From Dimorphilus gyrociliatus (Eukaryota; Animalia; Annelida): a stretch of 64,000 nt of DNA. The stretch is from positions 1,937,988-2,001,987 of the forward strand of contig CAJFCJ010000005.1 in the NCBI GenBank assembly GCA_904063045.1, in the 5' to 3' direction. Every line of letters begins with the position of its first letter. The stretch's first letter is position 1. The notes under the pieces were generated by a model. That model was not told the origin of the DNA. It was given only the letters and a program-made list of their open reading frames with translations, and did not search any database. The position numbers and the translations under genes are program-made. Positions 2,090 through 17,237 of this stretch are shown here, one piece after another.

Positions 2090-2136
<47 letters not shown>

Positions 2137-2140
2137 GCGA
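1670..2140. repeat. Interrupted (TA)n microsatellite tract in the Pumilio 3' UTR
   Basis: Long TATA runs interrupted by TGTA/TACA. The unit ATGTGAGTATTCA occurs twice (~1945 and ~2029). This tract produces the spurious IYIYIY ORFs. Confidence 0.9.
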
Positions 2141-2359
2141 ATAGGGCAACTAGCCGTATACAAAAAACGTGAATTATTCGGTGTCTTTTCTCTTTATATC
2201 ACTAATATTGTACTTTTTGGGAAAATCGTTAATAGAAAATACTAAAAATTGAACATCTGTTGTTAGTTAAACTTCTTCTGATGTAGGCCCGTTTTCGCTT
2301 ATATTGATCCAAAACATCTGCGCATGACGAAAAGAGCGCTTGTTTGAACCAGCTTTATT

Positions 2360-3786
2360 ATGGATAAAGAAACGTTCTTCTGGACTATATCATGGATTGT
2401 TCTTATTCCTATCCTATTATTTATACTGATACTGTTTATATATCTCAAAGATAAGACAAAGAGTAAAAAAGAACAAGTTTTAATAGTTTCTTTACTTTCA
2501 TCTCGAGTTTTATTTTTTGCTGTGACATTGCCTCTAAAATGTTCCAGTTCAATGAACGATTTGGCGTCTGAATTGATATGGTGCAAAATCATTTCAATTA
2601 GTTGGTACATAAGCGTTATCGCAGAGCAAAATACGACAATAGCCATTATATTTTTGGTCTGTTCAACCATTTTAAGAAAGAAAAACTTGACTTTCAATAG
2701 TGTTCTCTTGACAATCTTATCGATATGGATATTATCAAGTGCCGTTTCCTGTTTATTAGTATTTTCTTTTGAAGCTTATCATATGGAGAAATCAAATTGC
2801 ATTCTTTTCAATCAAGACTCGTTTACATTCAAAGTATTTAGCATAACAGTCGCGGTCGAAGGACTAATGACTGTTGTTTCCTTCTTGTACTATTTTATAC
2901 TTTTCGTTGTCGGAAAACACTCTTACAAGAAGAATAAAAATGAACAACCTATTGAAAATGGAGGAGGCAATTCTGACTTTATAAAACCTTTACCATCCTT
3001 ACCTAAACACGAAATATATAGTGATCCTGTGAAGTCAGCAATTTGTCTTTCATGCGCATCATCTTTCTTCTTCTCTGCTCTGCCCATATTTTTAGTTTGT
3101 TTAGTAAGTACCATAAATATCTTGTTTTATCTATTTTTCGCAATACGACTGTTTGGGAACAATTTTTACAGATTTTTCACAGAAAGGAGGCGGAGAAGAT
3201 ATTGATCTCTGTGAGTGTAGCCCAATCTTTGTTCATCTTGTTGATTTTGTTACATAGGGCTGTAAAGAACCGACGTCAAAGATTACACAGAGATGCAGAA
3301 AGATATATGTATTCTCAAAGAGTATCTGTTATATCATTTGATAGTTTCAGTACTTTCGATGATATTAATGCACCCAAAGATGAAGAAGCATTATACGACA
3401 CCGTTGCTAAAGAAATATGCACATCGGAAGCTGCCATTCAAGTCAACGTTGACAGCTTGAGCAGGCGAAATAAGGAGATTGTCAAAGAAGTTGAAGAGTC
3501 GTCTTCTATGAGAGATGATGGGATAACCAGTGACTATTCACAATTATCTCAGAAAGAAGAGGATTCAGCTTCAATAGGATCTTCAGTTGTCAAATTTCGA
3601 AGAATTAGAACCTTAGATATGGGACGTAGTGTCGATAAAGAGGAAGAAGAAGAGAAAAGAAACAAGCTATTTAGCGCCTGGAAGACTGCAGTAGCAACAG
3701 TGAGAATAGCAAATTGGTTAAGTGATAAACCTAAGCAAGCAGATGAAGATGACGGATGGAGTGAACAAGATTCAAGTATTGTTTAA
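2360..3786 (+). CDS. Divergent 7-transmembrane (rhodopsin-like GPCR-type) protein, ~452 aa, with long acidic C-tail
   Basis: Exons 2360-3103 and 3172-3786 (GTAAGT...TTACAG, phase 0) fuse two ORF-track entries. Seven hydrophobic segments are visible, with Cys at the top of TM3 (LIWCKII), Trp in TM4 (SIWIL), an ECL2 Cys (SNCIL) and Pro in TM6 (SALPIF). DRY and NPxxY are absent. Confidence 0.68.
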
Positions 3787-3912
3787 ATTTTGTGAGAATT
3801 AACCTTTTTTCAAAACATAAAAATACATTATCTTAGTTTATTATAACAATAGTTAAACAAGAATAAAATCTAATGAATAATGTTTAAAAACAATGAAAAT
3901 CGTAGAGTATTC

Positions 3913-4368
3913 TCAATTCTCCTTCGAACTATCATCATTCATCTTTTTTCTTATCTCCAGGACCTCTTTGTACTTTAATTTTCTCGGTATTACATCTGTT
4001 ATGGACAGACAAAAATACAATAAGGGTTGAAATTCCATAGCACATATTATAGTAAATAATCAAACCGAGTAAAAAAGACTCCAATTGCTCGTTTTTGTTT
4101 ACAACGTCGGCAAAATCATTATAGTTTATTTTTTGCTTATCAGGGCAATTTGTATACGTTTCTTCTACTAGATGTTCAACAAAGAGTTCCTGCAAATAGA
4201 ATATTAATAAAATATTCGATTTTTAACAAAATTTACCGTTGCTTTTCCAATCAAAAATAGAGAATCAGAACTGATCGATGATACATCTGGCGAGCTCTTC
4301 ATAATAAGCCTAATTCGAGACAAGGGGAAGAGAGAAACTCCTAGATTTGGTAATTTGGTTTCATCCAT
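3913..4368 (-). CDS. CHRAC1: Chromatin accessibility complex histone-fold protein CHRAC1 (CHRAC-15/16)
   Basis: Exons 4368-4237, 4189-~4070 and ~3995-3913. Translation is MDETKLPNLGVSLFPLSRIRLIMKSSPDVSSISSDSLFLIGKAT|ELFVEHL...INYNDFADVV...LL|DVIPRKLKY. LSRIRxIMKSSP and KATELFV are CHRAC1 hallmarks. The start has a perfect GCCGCCATGG Kozak context. Confidence 0.9.
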
Positions 4369-12128: not shown

Positions 12129-14036
12129 ATGAATCCTTTTTGGCATCTTTTAATCTATATTCTAATTTTGAGGTTTGTTCTTTTTATTAATTATTCTCTA
12201 CCTTTTTACCTTTTCTATCTATTTTAATCTTTTTCTATCGTGCATCGGGTTTTTTTTTCATTTCATTCTATCTATTGATCAATTTATCTTCTCTGTGATG
12301 TTCATTGAATCCGTCAATTTTCACCGTTTAATAAACTTTCGATTAATGAAATATTTTACGGTTTCTTAATTAATAGGTTAATTGAATCGAAAAGGAATAT
12401 TTCACATATGCATTTAATTATAAGTCAATTACTAGAGGATCAGTACAATGGAGAAATAAGACCAGGAGCTGTAAATAGTGAAGCGACAACAGTTTATTTA
12501 AACTTTCGAATAAATTCAATGTCAGCATTAAGGGAAACTTCCATGGTAAATATTTCTCATTCCTCTTTCTCTCTTCCCCCTCTCCCCCTTCTCTCTCTCC
12601 CTCTTTCTCTAGACCTTCATCTTACCTCCTATATTTTTCCTTTTTGTTTCTATATTTCCATTTAAATAAAGCACTAAATTCTAACCTTCTTTAGTATCAG
12701 AAATTTAGTTAAATTAAAGTAATCGTTTATTGATTAATTCTATAGGATTACACAGTCAACGTTTATTTAAGGATGATGTGGTTTGAACCGAGGTTAGCTT
12801 TTCAAACAGCACATGGAGACTATACAGAAAATGACGCCTACACCTTGTCACATAAACAATTCTCTAAACTCTGGATTCCAGATTTATTCATTAAGAATGA
12901 AAAGGACGGTAAATTACACGACCTTGTATTACCAAACAAGTTAATGCGGTTGAATGCTTCGGGCAGTATCCTGTATAGCCAGAGGCTAAGTTTAACTTTG
13001 GCATGTGAATTAGATTTGACACGGTTCCCTTTGGATAATCAAACCTGTAAATTTATATTTGCCAGTTGTGAGTGTTTAATCTCAGCTATTTTTCTTAATG
13101 TAATTCGGGTTTCTTTTATTTAAATAATAAGATGCCCATACTCTTGAGGATGTTATTATATTATGGACAAAAGAAAATCCGGTACAAGCAATTAAGGATC
13201 TAAAAGTACCGGAGTTTGAACTGTTAGATATTACAACTGGTTACTGCATATCAAATTCAAGTACTGGGGCATATGCTTGCCTAGAAGCTGTCCTTTTCTT
13301 CCAACGCCAGGTCAATTATTATCTTATTCAAGTCTATTTACCGTCGCTACTAGTCGTGGTACTTTCCTGGGTATCATTTTGGATAGACGCAGACGCCGTC
13401 CCAGCCAGAGTTTCACTGGGATTGTTGACTGTTCTGACAATGACTACACAAAGTTCAAATTTTGCTGCACGTATGCCTAGAGTTAGTTATGTAAAAGCAA
13501 TCGATGTTTGGATGGCTAGCTGCCTCTTGTTCGTTTTTGGCGCTCTTGTCGAATACTCATTTGTTAATGTTCTCGTTCGGCGTTCCAGACCTATGCAACA
13601 GCAAATAATAAGTAATCTTGTAAAACAAGCTCAGGTAAATATTAAAAAAGCAGGACTTGCAGTGAATTCACTGTGAATTATTCATAATTAACAGTCATAA
13701 AAAACGAGACAAATATATATATATATATATATAGGGGATTTTACTATACTCAGATTTTTCTTTTTCCTTTAGCAGGGAAACGGACCGTCCGATAACAATG
13801 ACTCATTGGATAAACACAGACAAGAGGCTTTCGAAACCCAAGTAAAATTACGCAGGATCAGTAATTCACCAGAAGTTACTGTCGTACCCCCGTCAATGAA
13901 TATGTCTTCCATAAAAAATCGAGGAGCGTTGATCGATAAATTCAGCAGGTTTACTTTTCCACTGGTCTTTGGCCTATTCAACTTATTTTATTGGATATAC
14001 TATTTAACAAACACGTCATCAAGTGAACTCCGATAG
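12129..14036 (+). CDS. Anion-selective Cys-loop receptor subunit (glycine receptor / GluCl-like)
   Basis: Exons 12129-12172, 12377-12545, 12746-13067, 13132-13634 and 13773-14036 are all in phase. Features: signal peptide, WIPDLFIKNEK, Cys-loop CELDLTRFPLDNQTC, loop-C Cys pair CISNSSTGAYAC, anion motif VPARVSLGLLTVLTMTTQ, VSYVKAIDVW, and M4 IDKFSRFTFPLVFGLFNLFYW. Confidence 0.93.
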
Positions 14037-14340
14037 ATGGAAGCACTTCAGTTTCATATTGTACATTTATATATCATTTTTCCTATTCCTCAATCATTTC
14101 CTCCTTACTAGACACTATTTTTTTGAAAACTGAATTAAATTTATTACAGTATTCTATATTTGCATTATTTTTAATATTCGATATCTTATTTCTTTGTCTC
14201 TCTCTCTCTCTCTCTCGCTTTAGACTTATCTCCTCTTTCCTTCTCTTTATCCTACACTTTTCTATTATATCTTTAAGACTATCAAAATTTTATTACATGT
14301 TCCTTCTTTTATATTATTTTTTAAAGATGAAGTGAAAACA

Positions 14341-14351
14341 AAGAGAGAGAG

Positions 14352-14390
<39 letters not shown>
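14341..14390. repeat. (GA)n microsatellite
   Basis: AGAG run of about 50 nt between the convergent channel gene and the His-brace gene. Confidence 0.9.
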
Positions 14391-14395
<5 letters not shown>

Positions 14396-14552
14396 TATTA
14401 GGGGAAAAGTTAGTATGACGAGAAAAAACCCAAAAGAAAAATATAAAACAAAACAGGGACAATTTTGTATTTTTTGCAAATAATCCTTTTATTATAAGAG
14501 AAAGAGAATTAAAATGGATGCTAAAAAAATATCATAATGAATTTCATTCAAA

Positions 14553-17237
14553 TTAAGAAGAAATCCTTGGAGCTTTGGCTATAAGCGCTTTCTCATTGAA
14601 TCTCGATGTGGTAATATGTAATTCTAATTCTCCTGCGTTTAGAGCACTAACAATATCAGCGGATGGATTATCAAGACTCCATTCTAGTTTTTGGGAATTA
14701 TCTTCCAATTGGATATAGCTTTCTCCCCTTACATTTGCATCTGTAGCTAGTGTTGTTGAGCCTCGTTTTAGGGTCAAACTTTGCACAACTTCGTTAGATG
14801 CAACATTTCTTAAGAGAGAGTTGATCTCCAATTTAGCATTTGAAGGTGCCAAAAAGAATGTACTTAAACCGTTTGTATTAACCTCTTCAACGCCGAAATC
14901 TGTTGGTTTACCTTCCAAAGATAGCACGCTGGTACGGAAATTGGCTACACTGAATTCTGGATAGGGGAATTGCCCATGAATTTGTCTATCTGAATTGAAT
15001 GCTGGAGAGCTGACAATTTCTGCATAAAGATGGCCGCTTGCCAAAATCCAATAAGATTTTACAGAGTCCAACGGCCATGTACCGGTGGCAACACCGTTTT
15101 CGAAATTCTCTATTTGGTAGATTAGACTACCAGAATGGCCTTGCCTAGCGGGTCCTCTTATCGACAAAGTTCCAGCGACATTAGGTGCAACAACTGCATA
15201 TCGGAATCCTGTCTGTTCTGGTATAAGAACAATTTCTCCCTTATTCTCTTTATAATTGATCCTTAACGGAGCAGCTACAGAACTGGCGAGGGTAACCTCG
15301 ATTTCTTCATTATTGGTAGATTTAAAAACGGCCGAATAAGAATTAGCATCTAAATATAAAGAACAATTAAAAGAATTAGCCAACAATGCTATCCTAATAT
15401 TTGGACGATGCTAAACGATTACCTCTGGGGGAGAGATTATACACTTGATAAACAAGATTTCCACTATCGACATCGGTAGAATCGACCCGTAGAACGGTAT
15501 CACCTTTCAAAAGAAGCAAAATAGAAGAGAGTTTAGTAAAGGTTGAAGGGTTTTATAGAAAAGGTCGCCTTGTTTATAAAGCTATTAAGGAAAACATGAA
15601 AATACATACCATTGAACTTTATCTCAATTGTACTGATTGCGAAGTTAGACGAAGCGGCCCTAACCCATACTCTATCATCCGTTATCGATAAACTTATAAT
15701 AGCCGATTTAGTATCTTGCTGATTAAAACCCTTTTAAAGAGAGACAAAAACACAAAATCAGAGATATAAAAACTAAGTTTAAGGAAGATTATCAATAGAC
15801 AATAATGTTTTTACAATGATTTATCATTAGATTGTTATCTTCTTCATCTAATTTGTTTATAAAAGAAATCAAATAATACTTACTCCTAGATACTTTGCAC
15901 TGGGAATACAAATTCCATTAGGTTCAACAACGAACGAATAAGGTGCATTTGATCCAATAAAATCGTTACCCTTTAGCCAACCATCCTTTCCCCAATCAAT
16001 ACCCAAATGGTAATAATATTGAAATTCGTGTATCTAGAGAAAGGAAAAAGTTATTTATTTGTTTTATTTATTTTACTCTATCGATTATATAATCAGATTT
16101 TATCACGAACTTTCTGCAGAAGGACCAGGGTAGATTTCTCTAATTGATTACCGGCACTTTCATCTCTAAGAGTCAATTCTAGACGGCCATTCTATAATAG
16201 AGATGGGAAGAAAGAAAGAAAAAATACAATATATATATATATATAGATATATACTTCAAAGATTATTTTCTTTCAATTGATTTAAATATTTACTTCTAAA
16301 TCGTCAATAGTATTGGAATCTAAATTGGACCATACTCCAATAGCCCTAATCGCTCCAGAGGCCACTGGAATTTCATATACAGCGTCATTGCCTTTGTAAA
16401 TACTCAATTTATGAGATGAGCTACAAATAATAAATAACATATATTAATCCATATATGTATATATCTATATATATATATATTATTTCTGATTAAAGTTAGT
16501 TTAAATACGTACGTAAATTGAGAGAGTGATATATTATATGCTAAATTATTCATGTGAATATCGTGGTAGAATTTACCGTCGGCTCCAGTTGAACCTATAT
16601 TTACTTTCGAGGTATATTCGTTAGCCGGTCTGTATGGCCATTGACCGATTAAGTTCTTTTTGTATTCCGCTGAGCAGCTGTTGATATCTCTATTTAAACC
16701 TTGGCTTGTTGGACGAATTTTTACGTTAGCGCAAGAGTAGTAAGTACTACAATTGTTATGTCCCATATTTTCTTGATAACATGGAGCCTCATCGGGTCTG
16801 TATTTATCCAACATAACCGATATTACTTGAAGGAAACACCTGTCGCATTTTATGTCTGGAATGTTGACGGTTAGGTAATGTTGAGCGGGGCAACGGCCGA
16901 TTGGATAACCAGATATCCAGCAGTCAGGTCCCAAATCCATTTTAGCAGCATCGTTATGGGGTATATGATCCAAGAGGAGGCAAGTGGCATCGGGTTTACC
17001 ATATTCGTTTAGACTCACTATAGTCGGGGCTTCTCTATGAAAGATGGTCTCTTCAAATCTTATTGTCATTGGTCCGGGTACGATATCCATGTAATTAGCT
17101 TCGAATGGGTTGTTCTCGTCGCTGCATGGTCCCGACTTGATACCACTGTTAGTACTCTCGGGACGAGGGCATACAAAACGTTGATGGCAGTTTGCAGTCC
17201 ATACAAATAAGCAAAATATTACCAATTTATTTATCAT
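14553..17237 (-). CDS. Secreted 706-aa protein: N-terminal His-brace LPMO-like domain plus about four CHRD-like repeats
   Basis: Exons 17237-16513, 16420-16294, 16191-16111, 16033-15884, 15730-15610, 15503-15423 and 15388-14553 sum to 2121 nt with consistent phases. Signal peptide MINKLVIFCLFVWTANC is followed directly by His (HQRFVCPRP...GIKSGPC); also EETIFH, IPDIKCDRCFLQVI and TYYSCANV. C-terminal repeats include SGHLYAEIV..PAF...QIHGQF. The CDS is well supported; the product assignment rests on recalled motifs. Confidence 0.78.

What the first reader, a model, noticed from the sequence alone, without database searches (positions are those of the whole stretch)
16713..17237. Secreted animal protein with an LPMO-like copper histidine brace
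Seen in sequence: a 17-aa signal peptide ending A-N-C puts His18 at the mature N-terminus (HQRFVCPRPESTNSGIKSGPC). A second His follows in EETIFH (H67), extra His residues occur in DHIPH, a CxxC lies in IPDIKCDRCFLQVI, and the domain ends in TYYSCANV. Established knowledge: lytic polysaccharide monooxygenases and LPMO-like copper proteins bind Cu through His1 plus a second His, with an axial Tyr/Phe in a terminal (F/Y)xxC strand. The K.GPC / ETI.H / LQVI / YY.C pattern is closest, from memory, to uncharacterised myxobacterial- and protist-type LPMO-like domains. It does not look like the arthropod AA15 type. Inference: this is an intron-containing animal gene for an unassigned copper oxidase or copper-binding family, possibly acting on chitin or other extracellular glycans, or handling copper.
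Basis: partly seen in the sequence, partly recalled or inferred. Interest (0 to 1): 0.86.

Follow-up and report, generated by a model that had tools for sequence, protein, structure and literature searches.

The report
Secreted annelid LPMO-like copper protein
A small marine worm makes a secreted protein whose front end has the fold and conserved residues of a copper "histidine-brace" enzyme and belongs to no experimentally studied family I could find; it is joined to a chordin-type domain array, so it may be a second, unstudied kind of oxidative copper enzyme in animals.

Summary
Window 17237-16713 (minus strand) is the start of a real, spliced, transcribed 7-exon gene (17237-14553). Its 693-aa product is identical to DgyrCDS3582 of the annelid Dimorphilus gyrociliatus.

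- **Signal peptide:** residues 1-17 end in A-N-C, so His18 becomes the mature N-terminus. In relatives, 80 of 85 have this His, and 72 of 73 have A/G/S/C just before it.
- **Conserved site:** His18, His67 and Tyr166 are near-invariant. In weak profile alignments they line up with His1/His60/Tyr140 of AA11, and Tyr166 with Tyr184 of AA15.
- **Fold:** the AlphaFold model (pLDDT 90) matches only LPMO-type structures in the top 22 of 48,161 PDB chains. The best is insect AA15 (Z 11.6).
- **Family:** no Pfam family matches. The nearest named family is NCBIfam "SCE4755 polysaccharide monooxygenase-like" (E 4e-10, below its cutoff).
- **Relatives:** mostly eukaryotes without names in the databases (the few traced are protists), plus one well-supported clade of annelids and molluscs; a brachiopod homologue was seen only by fold search.
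- **Rest of the protein:** a chordin-type CHRD array without VWC domains.

Copper binding and catalysis remain untested. I found no paper on this family. This scan had already noted the CHRD array on this window, and another LPMO-like domain elsewhere in this genome.

The parts
14553..17237 (-). Complete coding span of the gene (7 exons, 693 codons plus stop); product identical to DgyrCDS3582 of Dimorphilus gyrociliatus
   Evidence: Gene model built from the sequence. All six introns are confirmed by RNA contig joints. 693/693 identity to P0163.
16513..17237 (-). Exon 1 (aa 1-241 plus 2 nt): signal peptide, LPMO-like domain, start of CHRD-like domain 1
   Evidence: Joint 16420/16513 with GT..AG ends in runs X1 and X5.
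17187..17237 (-). Signal peptide, aa 1-17, ending A-N-C
   Evidence: Translation. It is the only strongly hydrophobic segment of the protein. The (-3,-1) pattern is conserved in 72/73 homologues.
16668..17186 (-). LPMO-like (SCE4755-type) domain, aa 18-190
   Evidence: AF2 model of aa 18-200, pLDDT 89.9, pTM 0.88. LPMO-only top structural hits. NF043005 hit.
17184..17186 (-). His18 codon: predicted mature N-terminal His (brace ligand 1)
   Evidence: His in 80/81 aligned domains. Model residue 1 pairs with the N-terminal His (or, in most AA9 rows, the residue next to it) in the listed LPMO matches.
17037..17039 (-). His67 codon: predicted second brace His, in the EE-x-I-x-H motif
   Evidence: His in 78/81. 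Aligned to His60 of AoAA11 in the profile alignment.
16956..16970 (-). DHIPH motif (aa 90-94), a family hallmark with two further near-invariant His residues
   Evidence: His91 in 78/81 and His94 in 74/81. Role unknown.
16836..16847 (-). CDRC (aa 131-134), invariant Cys pair
   Evidence: Both Cys in 81/81. Aligned to the C-x-x-C of TdAA15A.
16740..16742 (-). Tyr166 codon: predicted axial Tyr in the Y-x-S-C-A strand
   Evidence: Tyr in 78/81 and Phe in 3/81. Aligned to Tyr184 of TdAA15A and Tyr140 of AoAA11. The role of Tyr184 is taken from PMC5823890.
16294..16420 (-). Exon 2
   Evidence: RNA joints.
16111..16191 (-). Exon 3
   Evidence: RNA joints in X5.
15883..16033 (-). Exon 4
   Evidence: RNA joints.
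15608..15729 (-). Exon 5
   Evidence: RNA joints.
15423..15501 (-). Exon 6
   Evidence: RNA joints.
14553..15349 (-). Exon 7, coding part with the stop codon (14553-14555)
   Evidence: RNA joints; translation.
16019..16640 (-). CHRD-like domain 1 (about aa 200-316; the span includes three introns)
   Evidence: Pfam CHRD E 0.0029 at the matching place in the 88% orthologue. hhalign similarity to domains 3 and 4. Chordin fold match.
15339..16018 (-). Middle beta-rich region (about aa 317-432; the span includes three introns); a divergent fourth CHRD or another beta domain
   Evidence: Beta strands in the whole-protein model. No significant repeat similarity.
14955..15338 (-). CHRD-like domain 3 (about aa 433-560)
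   Evidence: hhalign P 4.9e-6 against domain 4.
14556..14954 (-). CHRD-like domain 4 (about aa 561-693)
   Evidence: Weak Pfam CHRD hit, E 0.13, at exon-7 residues 158-254. hhalign. Chordin fold match.
14439..14552 (-). 3' UTR with an AATAAA signal at 14493-14488
   Evidence: RNA contigs end at 14439-14500. Motif search.

Best explanation
The gene encodes a soluble, secreted protein of about 75 kDa.

Shown by sequence or tool results:
- Removal of a 17-aa signal peptide would leave His18 as residue 1.
- Residues 18-190 form an LPMO-type beta-sandwich of the SCE4755-like branch.
- His18, His67 and Tyr166 are conserved family-wide.
- Residues 200-693 form a chordin-type CHRD array.

Inferred:
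- The amino terminus and side chain of His18, together with His67, hold one copper ion in a histidine brace, with Tyr166 below it.
- An outside electron donor reduces the copper to Cu(I). The copper then uses O2 or H2O2 to oxidise an extracellular substrate.
- That substrate is most likely a polysaccharide of the worm's own matrix or of its food, such as chitin or a glycosaminoglycan-like glycan.
- The CHRD array acts as the matrix- or glycan-binding arm, in the place that carbohydrate-binding modules often occupy in modular LPMOs (general knowledge).

My probability is about 0.85-0.9 for the fold and the copper brace, and about 0.4-0.45 for oxidative catalysis on a glycan.
For: Gene and expression:
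- The spliced gene is real and transcribed.
- The product is identical to an annotated D. gyrociliatus protein on a 4.5-Mb contig.

His at the mature N-terminus:
- It is conserved in 80/85 relatives.
- The -1 and -3 positions fit signal peptidase in 72/73.

Copper-site residues:
- Column conservation: His18 80/81, His67 78/81, Tyr166 78/81 plus 3 Phe.
- Profile alignments place these three on His1/His60/Tyr140 of AoAA11, and Tyr166 on Tyr184 of TdAA15A. The TdAA15A site comes from PMC5823890.

Fold:
- AF2 model pLDDT 89.9, pTM 0.88.
- All 50 top Foldseek PDB hits are LPMOs.
- In an exhaustive VIA search of 48,161 chains, ranks 1-22 are all LPMO or LPMO-like (Z 11.6-7.8). In those rows the model's residue 1 pairs with the N-terminal His, or in most AA9 rows with the residue next to it.

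Family:
- NF043005 'polysaccharide monooxygenase-like' matches this protein (E 3.7e-10) and 80/81 relatives.

Support for a redox role:
- One relative (P0031) fuses the same domain to DOMON/CDH-type cytochrome and cytochrome b561 electron-transfer modules.
- A similar DOMON + cytochrome b561 part in P0184 follows a PHM-type copper monooxygenase.

CHRD arm:
- Chordin and Sog are the six best Swiss-Prot fold matches to the orthologue's C-terminal 490 aa (E 3e-13 to 2e-9).
- Chordin's four CHRD domains bind heparin and heparan sulfate (PMC13382577).
Against: - No copper binding or activity has been measured for any member. A histidine brace does not predict polysaccharide oxidation, as X325 and Bim1 show.
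- I could not measure the geometry of the three residues, because model coordinates are not exposed.
- The position two residues before the axial Tyr is Ser in this family (52/81). In the alignments the same position is Glu in AoAA11 and TdAA15A. From general knowledge, a Gln or Glu near the copper tunes LPMO reactivity.
- Two extra near-invariant His residues (His91, His94) and Asp144 could fill the open copper position, as the Asp ligand does in X325.
- The CHRD array here is acidic (pI 5.1). Chordin's charge-based binding to sulfated glycans may therefore not carry over.
- The DOMON-b561 fusion is a single transcript-derived protein.
- The sequence links to AA11 and AA15 are individually not significant (E 0.085-0.3).
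Confidence: 0.5

Rival explanations
1. The domain is a non-catalytic copper-binding or copper-handling protein, like fungal X325/Bim1 or bacterial CopC. It captures Cu(II) outside the cell and passes it on or buffers it. The extra conserved His and Asp residues complete the coordination sphere and block substrate access.
For: - LaX325 is among the best structural matches (Z 9.8-10.0).
- 15 of 81 relatives weakly match Pfam BIM1-like_dom, against 6 of 81 for LPMO_10.
- His91, His94 and Asp144 are near-invariant.
- Ser, not Gln or Glu, sits two residues before the axial Tyr.
- The Owenia and mollusc orthologues end in a hydrophobic stretch after a copper-ligand-less cupredoxin-like domain. They are therefore probably held at the cell surface, as Bim1 is.
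- Reviews state that a brace alone does not imply oxidase activity.
Against: - This protein itself does not match PF20238.
- It has no GPI signal or membrane anchor.
- A relative is fused to a DOMON-cytochrome b561 electron-transfer chain, which fits redox turnover better than metal delivery.
- A large CHRD array is not expected in a chaperone.
- No copper-transport partner is evident in the window.
Confidence: 0.27
2. The domain is a copper-dependent redox enzyme with a non-polysaccharide role. Examples are an H2O2-generating oxidase, or an oxidase acting on a protein, phenolic or small-molecule substrate in the extracellular matrix.
For: - The fold and brace evidence is the same as for the best explanation.
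- Family members carry very varied partners, namely Hint, trypsin + PAN, phosphodiesterase/sulfatase-like and DOMON-b561, rather than classical carbohydrate-binding modules.
- Only one weak, sub-threshold chitin-binding hit was seen (P0069, E 0.0024).
Against: - Every experimentally characterised close structural neighbour acts on, or binds at, polysaccharide surfaces, or binds copper.
- The CHRD arm has a documented glycan-binding precedent.
Confidence: 0.13
3. The domain no longer binds metal. The protein is a structural, adhesive or signalling matrix protein, a chordin relative that uses the LPMO-like fold only as a binding module.
For: - Chordin and Sog are the best full-length fold matches for the C-terminal part.
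- A chiton paralogue (P0010) has Glu in place of His1, so metal-free versions exist.
Against: - His18, His67 and Tyr166 are kept in this protein and in about 96-99% of relatives.
- There are no VWC/CR domains, which are the BMP-binding part of chordin according to PMC13382577.
Confidence: 0.07

Closest known systems
AA15 LPMO, Thermobia domestica TdAA15A (PDB 5msz)
   Same: It is the best solved structural neighbour (Z 11.6, rmsd 2.6 A over 134 residues, with His1 on His1). A weak profile match aligns the C-x-x-C strand and the Y-x-x-C-A strand, placing Tyr166 on the axial Tyr184. It is also a secreted animal protein with many disulfides.
   Different: There is no PF03067 match at E<=10, and the profile E-value of 0.085 is not significant. 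The stretch before the second His is much shorter: His at mature position 50, against 91 in TdAA15A. This family has the DHIPHND motif, which was not seen in the AA11 alignment. It also has Ser rather than Glu two residues before the axial Tyr.
NCBIfam NF043005, SCE4755 family polysaccharide monooxygenase-like protein (bacterial, uncharacterised)
   Same: It is the only named sequence family that matches: E 3.7e-10 for this protein, and 80/81 relatives match, the best at 9.4e-23. Myxobacterial clusters of that name match the model at TM 0.60.
   Different: The score of 40 bits is below the curated 75-bit cutoff, and the best stretch covers only the C-terminal third of the profile. The protein is therefore a homologue, not an equivalog. 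The window protein is eukaryotic, multi-domain and intron-bearing. No paper on the family was found.
X325 / Bim1 LPMO-like copper proteins of fungi (PDB 6ibh, 6ibi; PF20238)
   Same: The fold and N-terminal His match (Z 9.8-10.0). 15 of 81 relatives weakly match PF20238. Like them, this is an extracellular protein of unknown catalytic status.
   Different: This protein does not match PF20238 and has no GPI anchor. Whether an Asp ligand is present could not be tested.
AA11 LPMOs (AoAA11, PDB 4mah/4mai; AfAA11B, PDB 9exj/9hdg)
   Same: The profile alignment places His1, the second His (His60) and the axial Tyr (Tyr140) of AoAA11 on His18, His67 and Tyr166. Structural Z values are 8.7-9.9.
   Different: The E-values of 0.11-0.3 are not significant. 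AA11 is fungal, and the DHIPHND motif was not aligned.
Chordin / Sog CHRD array
   Same: The C-terminal ~490 aa of the orthologue model finds chordin and Sog as its six best Swiss-Prot fold matches, spanning the four-CHRD region. Three repeats are recognisably similar to each other. The Owenia orthologue passes the Pfam CHRD threshold.
   Different: There are no VWC/CR domains, so it is not a chordin orthologue. The array is net acidic (pI 5.1), whereas chordin binds sulfated glycans through basic patches. It follows an LPMO-like domain rather than CR1.

Membership tests
LPMO superfamily (histidine-brace copper fold) | His as the first residue of the mature, secreted protein | tested here: met
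   A-N-C|H site. His aligned in 80/85 relatives. -1 is A/G/S/C in 72/73. There was no SignalP run and no N-terminal sequencing.
LPMO superfamily (histidine-brace copper fold) | A conserved second His that completes the brace | tested here: met
   His67 in 78/81. Aligned to His60 of AoAA11.
LPMO superfamily (histidine-brace copper fold) | Axial Tyr or Phe on a C-terminal strand | tested here: met
   Tyr166 in 78/81, Phe in 3/81. Aligned to Tyr184 of TdAA15A and Tyr140 of AoAA11.
LPMO superfamily (histidine-brace copper fold) | Immunoglobulin-like beta-sandwich that superposes on solved LPMOs from residue 1 | tested here: met
   pLDDT 89.9. Ranks 1-22 of 48,161 chains are all LPMO-type, Z 11.6-7.8.
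LPMO superfamily (histidine-brace copper fold) | The three residues lie within copper-binding distance (T-shaped brace) | not testable with these tools
   Model coordinates are not returned, so only aligned ranges and pLDDT were available.
LPMO superfamily (histidine-brace copper fold) | Binds one Cu and oxidatively cleaves a polysaccharide | not testable with these tools
   Needs protein chemistry.
NCBIfam NF043005 (SCE4755 family) | HMM score at or above the curated cutoff (75 bits) | tested here: not met
   40 bits, E 3.7e-10, partial profile coverage. 80/81 relatives match at E<=1e-3. This shows homology, not membership as an equivalog.
AA10/AA15 (Pfam PF03067 LPMO_10) | Significant match to PF03067 | tested here: not met
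   No Pfam family at E<=10 for this protein. Only 6/81 relatives match weakly.
AA10/AA15 (Pfam PF03067 LPMO_10) | Significant sequence similarity to a characterised AA15 member | tested here: inconclusive
   Family profile against TdAA15A: E 0.085 over 66 residues.
X325/Bim1 (Pfam PF20238) | Match to PF20238 | tested here: not met
   No hit for this protein. 15/81 relatives hit weakly, the best at 1.2e-4.
X325/Bim1 (Pfam PF20238) | GPI anchor or C-terminal hydrophobic signal | tested here: not met
   The only hydrophobic segment is the N-terminal signal peptide, and the C-terminus is polar.
X325/Bim1 (Pfam PF20238) | Asp carboxylate as the fourth equatorial copper ligand | not testable with these tools
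   Asp144 is near-invariant (77/81), but its position relative to the site could not be measured.
Chordin | Array of CHRD domains | tested here: met
   Chordin and Sog are the top six fold matches. Internal repeats. Pfam CHRD above threshold in the Owenia orthologue and weak here.
Chordin | Flanking VWC (cysteine-rich) BMP-binding domains | tested here: not met
   No VWC hit in the scanned parts of this protein (aa 18-241 and 430-693) or in the full-length 88% orthologue and other orthologues. There is only one Cys after residue 188.

The most novel reading that the evidence does not exclude
This is the animal branch of a so-far unclassified family of copper monooxygenases, which would be a new CAZy auxiliary-activity family beside AA15. 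Lophotrochozoans would use it on their own extracellular glycans (chitin of chaetae, shell or radula, or glycosaminoglycan-like matrix), guided by a chordin-type CHRD array. Its copper site would be surrounded by two extra invariant His residues and so may do chemistry different from known LPMOs. If so, CHRD arrays would be general glycan-targeting modules that chordin later borrowed, or the reverse.
Probability: 0.3. Interest if true: 0.85.

Novelty: new variant of a known kind. Interest (0 to 1): 0.64.

Why it matters
As far as I found, the only LPMO family reported in animals is AA15, best studied in arthropods. This gene shows a second, sequence-distinct histidine-brace family in animals. 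It is inherited as one clade in annelids and molluscs (a brachiopod homologue was seen only by fold search), and it is widespread in other, mostly unnamed eukaryotic sequences, of which the few traced are protists. Related folds occur in giant-virus and myxobacterial protein clusters.

No member has been studied experimentally, and I found no paper on the family. It is therefore an open target for a new copper-enzyme activity or a new copper-handling route.

The fusion to a chordin-type CHRD array is also informative in the other direction. CHRD domains had no known function until they were shown in 2026 to bind glycosaminoglycans. Finding them placed after an LPMO-like domain supports a general glycan- or matrix-targeting role.

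A practical point follows. CHRD-only searches for chordin in annelids, where chordin was repeatedly lost, could pick up this gene family by mistake.

Tried and rejected
- **Placozoan origin.** I first guessed a placozoan, from the low GC, short introns, marine metatranscriptome hits and an unmasked Trichoplax AFDB hit. The 693/693 identity to a Dimorphilus gyrociliatus protein rejected this.
- **Direct sequence searches.** Direct Pfam and PDB sequence searches with the protein gave nothing useful.
- **Word-index search.** The homologue search found only two hits because of its length window. One of them, P0001, is a gene call that reads through intron 1, so I did not use it for gene structure.
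- **Bacterial neighbourhoods.** The search for related loci with the family alignment failed because no stretch was conserved enough. Bacterial SCE4755 gene neighbourhoods were therefore not examined. The top 150 relatives look eukaryotic.
- **Literature.** Searches for SCE4755, CHRD + LPMO, Trichoplax + LPMO and LPMO + annelid/brachiopod/Naegleria found no description of the family. AA18 turned out to be CelOCE, which is unrelated.
- **Whole-protein Foldseek against PDB.** It gave only generic multi-beta-domain hits such as complement C3.
- **Superoxide dismutase activity in the CHRD domains.** I considered that they might supply H2O2, because CHRD is SOD-like. I rejected this because the C-terminal 490 aa hold only nine His residues and lack SOD-type ligand sets.
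- **Cupredoxin domain as electron donor.** The domain found in Owenia and mollusc orthologues lacks the type-1 copper Cys/His ligands, so it resembles early nodulins rather than plastocyanin. It is also absent from this gene and from the window.
- **Paralogues.** The window holds no second copy of the gene.
- **Viral fold search.** It gave only distant chlorovirus, fusolin and GP37 matches.
Full report
**1. What is in the sequence**

- EETIFH (His67)
- DHIPH (aa 90-94)
- CDRC (aa 131-134)
- YYSCANV (Tyr166)

The finding's end coordinate, 16713, is residue 175.

**2. The gene is real, spliced and transcribed**

I derived a seven-exon model from splice signals and reading frames.

Six joints, all with GT..AG ends on the minus strand, reproduce the model exactly. 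The introns are 16421-16512, 16192-16293, 16034-16110, 15730-15882, 15502-15607 and 15350-15422. Four of them are seen in two runs. The transcript ends near 14439-14500, after an AATAAA signal at 14493.

The product is 693 aa. It is identical, 693 of 693, to DgyrCDS3582 of the miniature annelid Dimorphilus gyrociliatus, annotated on a 4.5-Mb contig. A Cys-loop receptor gene lies convergently next to it. There is no second copy in the window.

**3. Relatives and conservation**

Pfam and direct PDB sequence searches found nothing. An exhaustive phmmer search of 1.84 billion cluster representatives found 271 relatives at E<=1e-3 and 138 at E<=1e-10.

Conservation around the cleavage site:
- Of 85 hits covering the domain, 80 have His aligned to His18.
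- In 73 hits that start with Met, the residue before that His is A, G, S or C in 72, and position -3 is small in 72. The median presequence is 21 residues.
- This is the signal-peptidase pattern, so the His is N-terminal across the family.

In an 81-sequence alignment (A1) the column counts are:

| Residue | Conserved in |
|---|---|
| His18 | 80/81 |
| His67 | 78/81 |
| Tyr166 | 78/81, plus 3 Phe |
| His91 | 78/81 |
| His94 | 74/81 |
| Glu63 | 77/81 |
| Asp144 | 77/81 |
| Five Cys | 81/81 |

**4. Fold**

AlphaFold2 on A1 gave a confident model of residues 18-200 (pLDDT 89.9, pTM 0.88).
- All 50 best Foldseek PDB matches are LPMOs of families AA10, AA9, AA11 and AA16, or fusolin.
- In a Foldseek-independent scan of 48,161 representative chains, ranks 1-22 are all LPMO or LPMO-like proteins. 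The first unrelated fold, a carbohydrate-binding module, appears at Z 7.6.
- The best matches are TdAA15A (Z 11.6, rmsd 2.6 A, 134 residues), AA10s (about Z 10), AA11 (9.9) and LaX325 (9.8-10.0).
- In the LPMO-type rows the aligned range begins at model residue 1, paired with the target's N-terminal His or, in most AA9 rows, the residue next to it.

A profile of A1 against PDB sequences gives only weak hits. They are nevertheless mutually consistent:
- With AoAA11, His18, His67 and Tyr166 fall on His1, His60 and Tyr140.
- With TdAA15A, the CxxC strand and Y-x-x-C-A align, and Tyr166 falls on Tyr184.

PMC5823890 confirms His1, His91 and axial Tyr184 as the TdAA15A site. I could not measure distances in the model, because coordinates are not returned.

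**5. Which family**

- The only named sequence family that matches is NCBIfam NF043005, 'SCE4755 family polysaccharide monooxygenase-like protein'. The score is 40 bits at E 3.7e-10, below the 75-bit cutoff.
- 80 of 81 relatives match it, the best at 9.4e-23.
- Only 15/81 weakly match BIM1-like_dom and 6/81 match LPMO_10. This protein matches neither.
- ESM-Atlas searches agree. Unnamed chlorophyte and giant-virus clusters match at TM 0.74-0.77, myxobacterial SCE4755 clusters at 0.60 and AA10s at 0.57.
- AlphaFold DB clusters add Lingula, octopus and Naegleria proteins.
- I found no paper on the family. A 2023 review of histidine-brace proteins does not list it. CAZy's newest LPMO-type family mentioned in the literature, AA18, is CelOCE, a different protein.

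**6. Evolution**

Named animal homologues are the annelid Owenia (61% identity) and molluscs from gastropods, chitons, cephalopods and a bivalve. All are labelled uncharacterised or 'CHRD domain-containing'.

In a maximum-likelihood tree the eleven known animal sequences fall in one clade of 13 rows with SH-aLRT 98. The other two rows are unlabelled long proteins. Annelids group together inside it (98) and the molluscs group separately (85). The clade is nested among otherwise unlabelled sequences.

This pattern, the six introns and the chromosomal context argue for vertical inheritance in Lophotrochozoa and against contamination.

**7. The rest of the protein**

A whole-protein model of the 88% orthologue P0003 (pLDDT 80, pTM 0.79) finds chordin from five vertebrates and Drosophila Sog as its six best Swiss-Prot matches. 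The E-values run from 3.4e-13 to 1.7e-9, over residues 127-684 against chordin residues about 70-650.

- Segments 200-316, 433-560 and 561-693 are recognisably repeats of each other (hhalign P 5e-6 to 5e-4). Segment 317-432 is not.
- Pfam CHRD passes its threshold in the Owenia orthologue and is weak here.
- There are no VWC domains.
- A 2026 paper shows that CHRD domains are SOD-like Greek-key barrels without metal sites, and that chordin's four CHRD domains bind heparin and heparan sulfate (PMC13382577).
- The array here is acidic (pI 5.1). The protein has no membrane anchor or GPI signal.

The Owenia and mollusc orthologues carry, after the CHRD array, a phytocyanin-like cupredoxin domain followed by a hydrophobic stretch that looks like a transmembrane helix. 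This was seen in 8 of 9 tested. The cupredoxin domain lacks the type-1 copper ligands. Both dinophilid proteins end before this part, and the window holds no remnant of it.

**8. Clues to function from other architectures**

Other family members fuse the same N-terminal domain to:
- Hint autoprocessing modules (three representatives)
- trypsin + PAN
- a phosphodiesterase/sulfatase-type domain (a foraminiferan)
- in P0031, two DOMON domains (one region also matching the CDH cytochrome model) plus cytochrome b561

A similar DOMON + cytochrome b561 part is found in P0184 after a PHM-type copper monooxygenase. From general knowledge, the DOMON-type cytochrome domain of cellobiose dehydrogenase is a known electron donor to fungal LPMOs. 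This single fusion is the best available hint that the domain is a redox-active copper centre rather than only a metal carrier.

**9. Interpretation**

Firmly supported:
- The protein is a secreted histidine-brace domain of the LPMO superfamily.
- It belongs to a sequence family distinct from AA15 and from X325.
- It is joined to a chordin-type CHRD array.

Inferred: copper binding, at about 0.85-0.9.

Uncertain: whether it is an oxidative enzyme on a glycan (about 0.4-0.45), a copper-handling protein of the X325/Bim1 type (about 0.27), another kind of copper oxidase (about 0.13), or a metal-free matrix protein (about 0.07).

Three points weigh against a classical LPMO mechanism:
- Ser sits two residues before the axial Tyr, where the aligned AA11 and AA15 enzymes have Glu.
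- The DHIPHND histidines and Asp144 are invariant and unexplained.
- The orthologues appear to be held at the cell surface.

**10. Verdict**

AA15 is the nearest solved structure, and the domain is the head of a much larger CHRD-bearing protein. The thing is a new variant within a known kind. It is uncharacterised experimentally but already visible to automated annotation, both as the NCBIfam family name and as an unannotated protein in the public D. gyrociliatus annotation, whose structure model appears in AlphaFold DB.

Noticed in passing
window 12408-14036, + strand: A Cys-loop ligand-gated ion channel gene (Neur_chan_LBD E 7.7e-22; Neur_chan_memb E 2.5e-29) lies convergent with the LPMO-like gene. 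Their 3' ends are about 400-500 bp apart.
   Followed up: partly
window about 14340-14410: A (GA/CT)n microsatellite lies just beyond the 3' end of the gene. It shows up as runs of SLSL.../RERE... in the ORF list.
   Followed up: no
P0004 (Owenia) aa 625-784; P0006, P0153, P0007, P0008, P0012, P0014, P0025 (molluscs) C-termini: After the CHRD array, the orthologues carry a phytocyanin-like cupredoxin domain (PF02298, E 4e-5 to 0.07 in 8 of 9 tested) followed by a hydrophobic, transmembrane-like stretch. The domain lacks the type-1 copper Cys/His ligands. The Dimorphilus protein and its 88% relative lack this part, so the dinophilid form is soluble.
   Followed up: yes
P0019, P0041, P0053 (relatives of unknown taxon): The same histidine-brace domain is fused to a Hint autoprocessing module (E 7e-16 to 7e-26). 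This is a hedgehog-like layout in which the LPMO-like domain takes the place of the signalling domain.
   Followed up: partly
P0031 (782 aa) and P0184 (874 aa): P0031 joins the histidine-brace domain to DOMON/CDH-type cytochrome and cytochrome b561. P0184 has a similar DOMON + cytochrome b561 part after a PHM-type copper monooxygenase. This suggests interchangeable copper heads on one electron-transfer chassis.
   Followed up: partly
P0010 (Liolophura sinensis, 755 aa): A chiton paralogue has Glu where all others have the N-terminal His (…TSA|EIRLLCPRP). It may be a naturally brace-less, non-catalytic copy.
   Followed up: no
P0001 (334 aa, Logan): This gene call from a related dinophilid reads straight through intron 1 into exon 2. 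It illustrates that prokaryote-style ORF calls in the protein collection can contain translated intron (one search compared).
   Followed up: yes
whole gene, window 14553-17237: Chordin was reported lost repeatedly in annelids, and candidate chordins were kept if they aligned to CHRD domains (PMC9977687). CHRD-bearing genes like this one could be mistaken for chordin remnants in such screens. I did not check whether this happened.
   Followed up: no
window 14500-17230, run X5: Assembler word depth of the spliced contigs in the small run X5 (labelled organism A, not identified here) is 2,100-4,350, which hints at high expression. There was no baseline gene to compare with, and the reads tool allowed one call only.
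   Followed up: no
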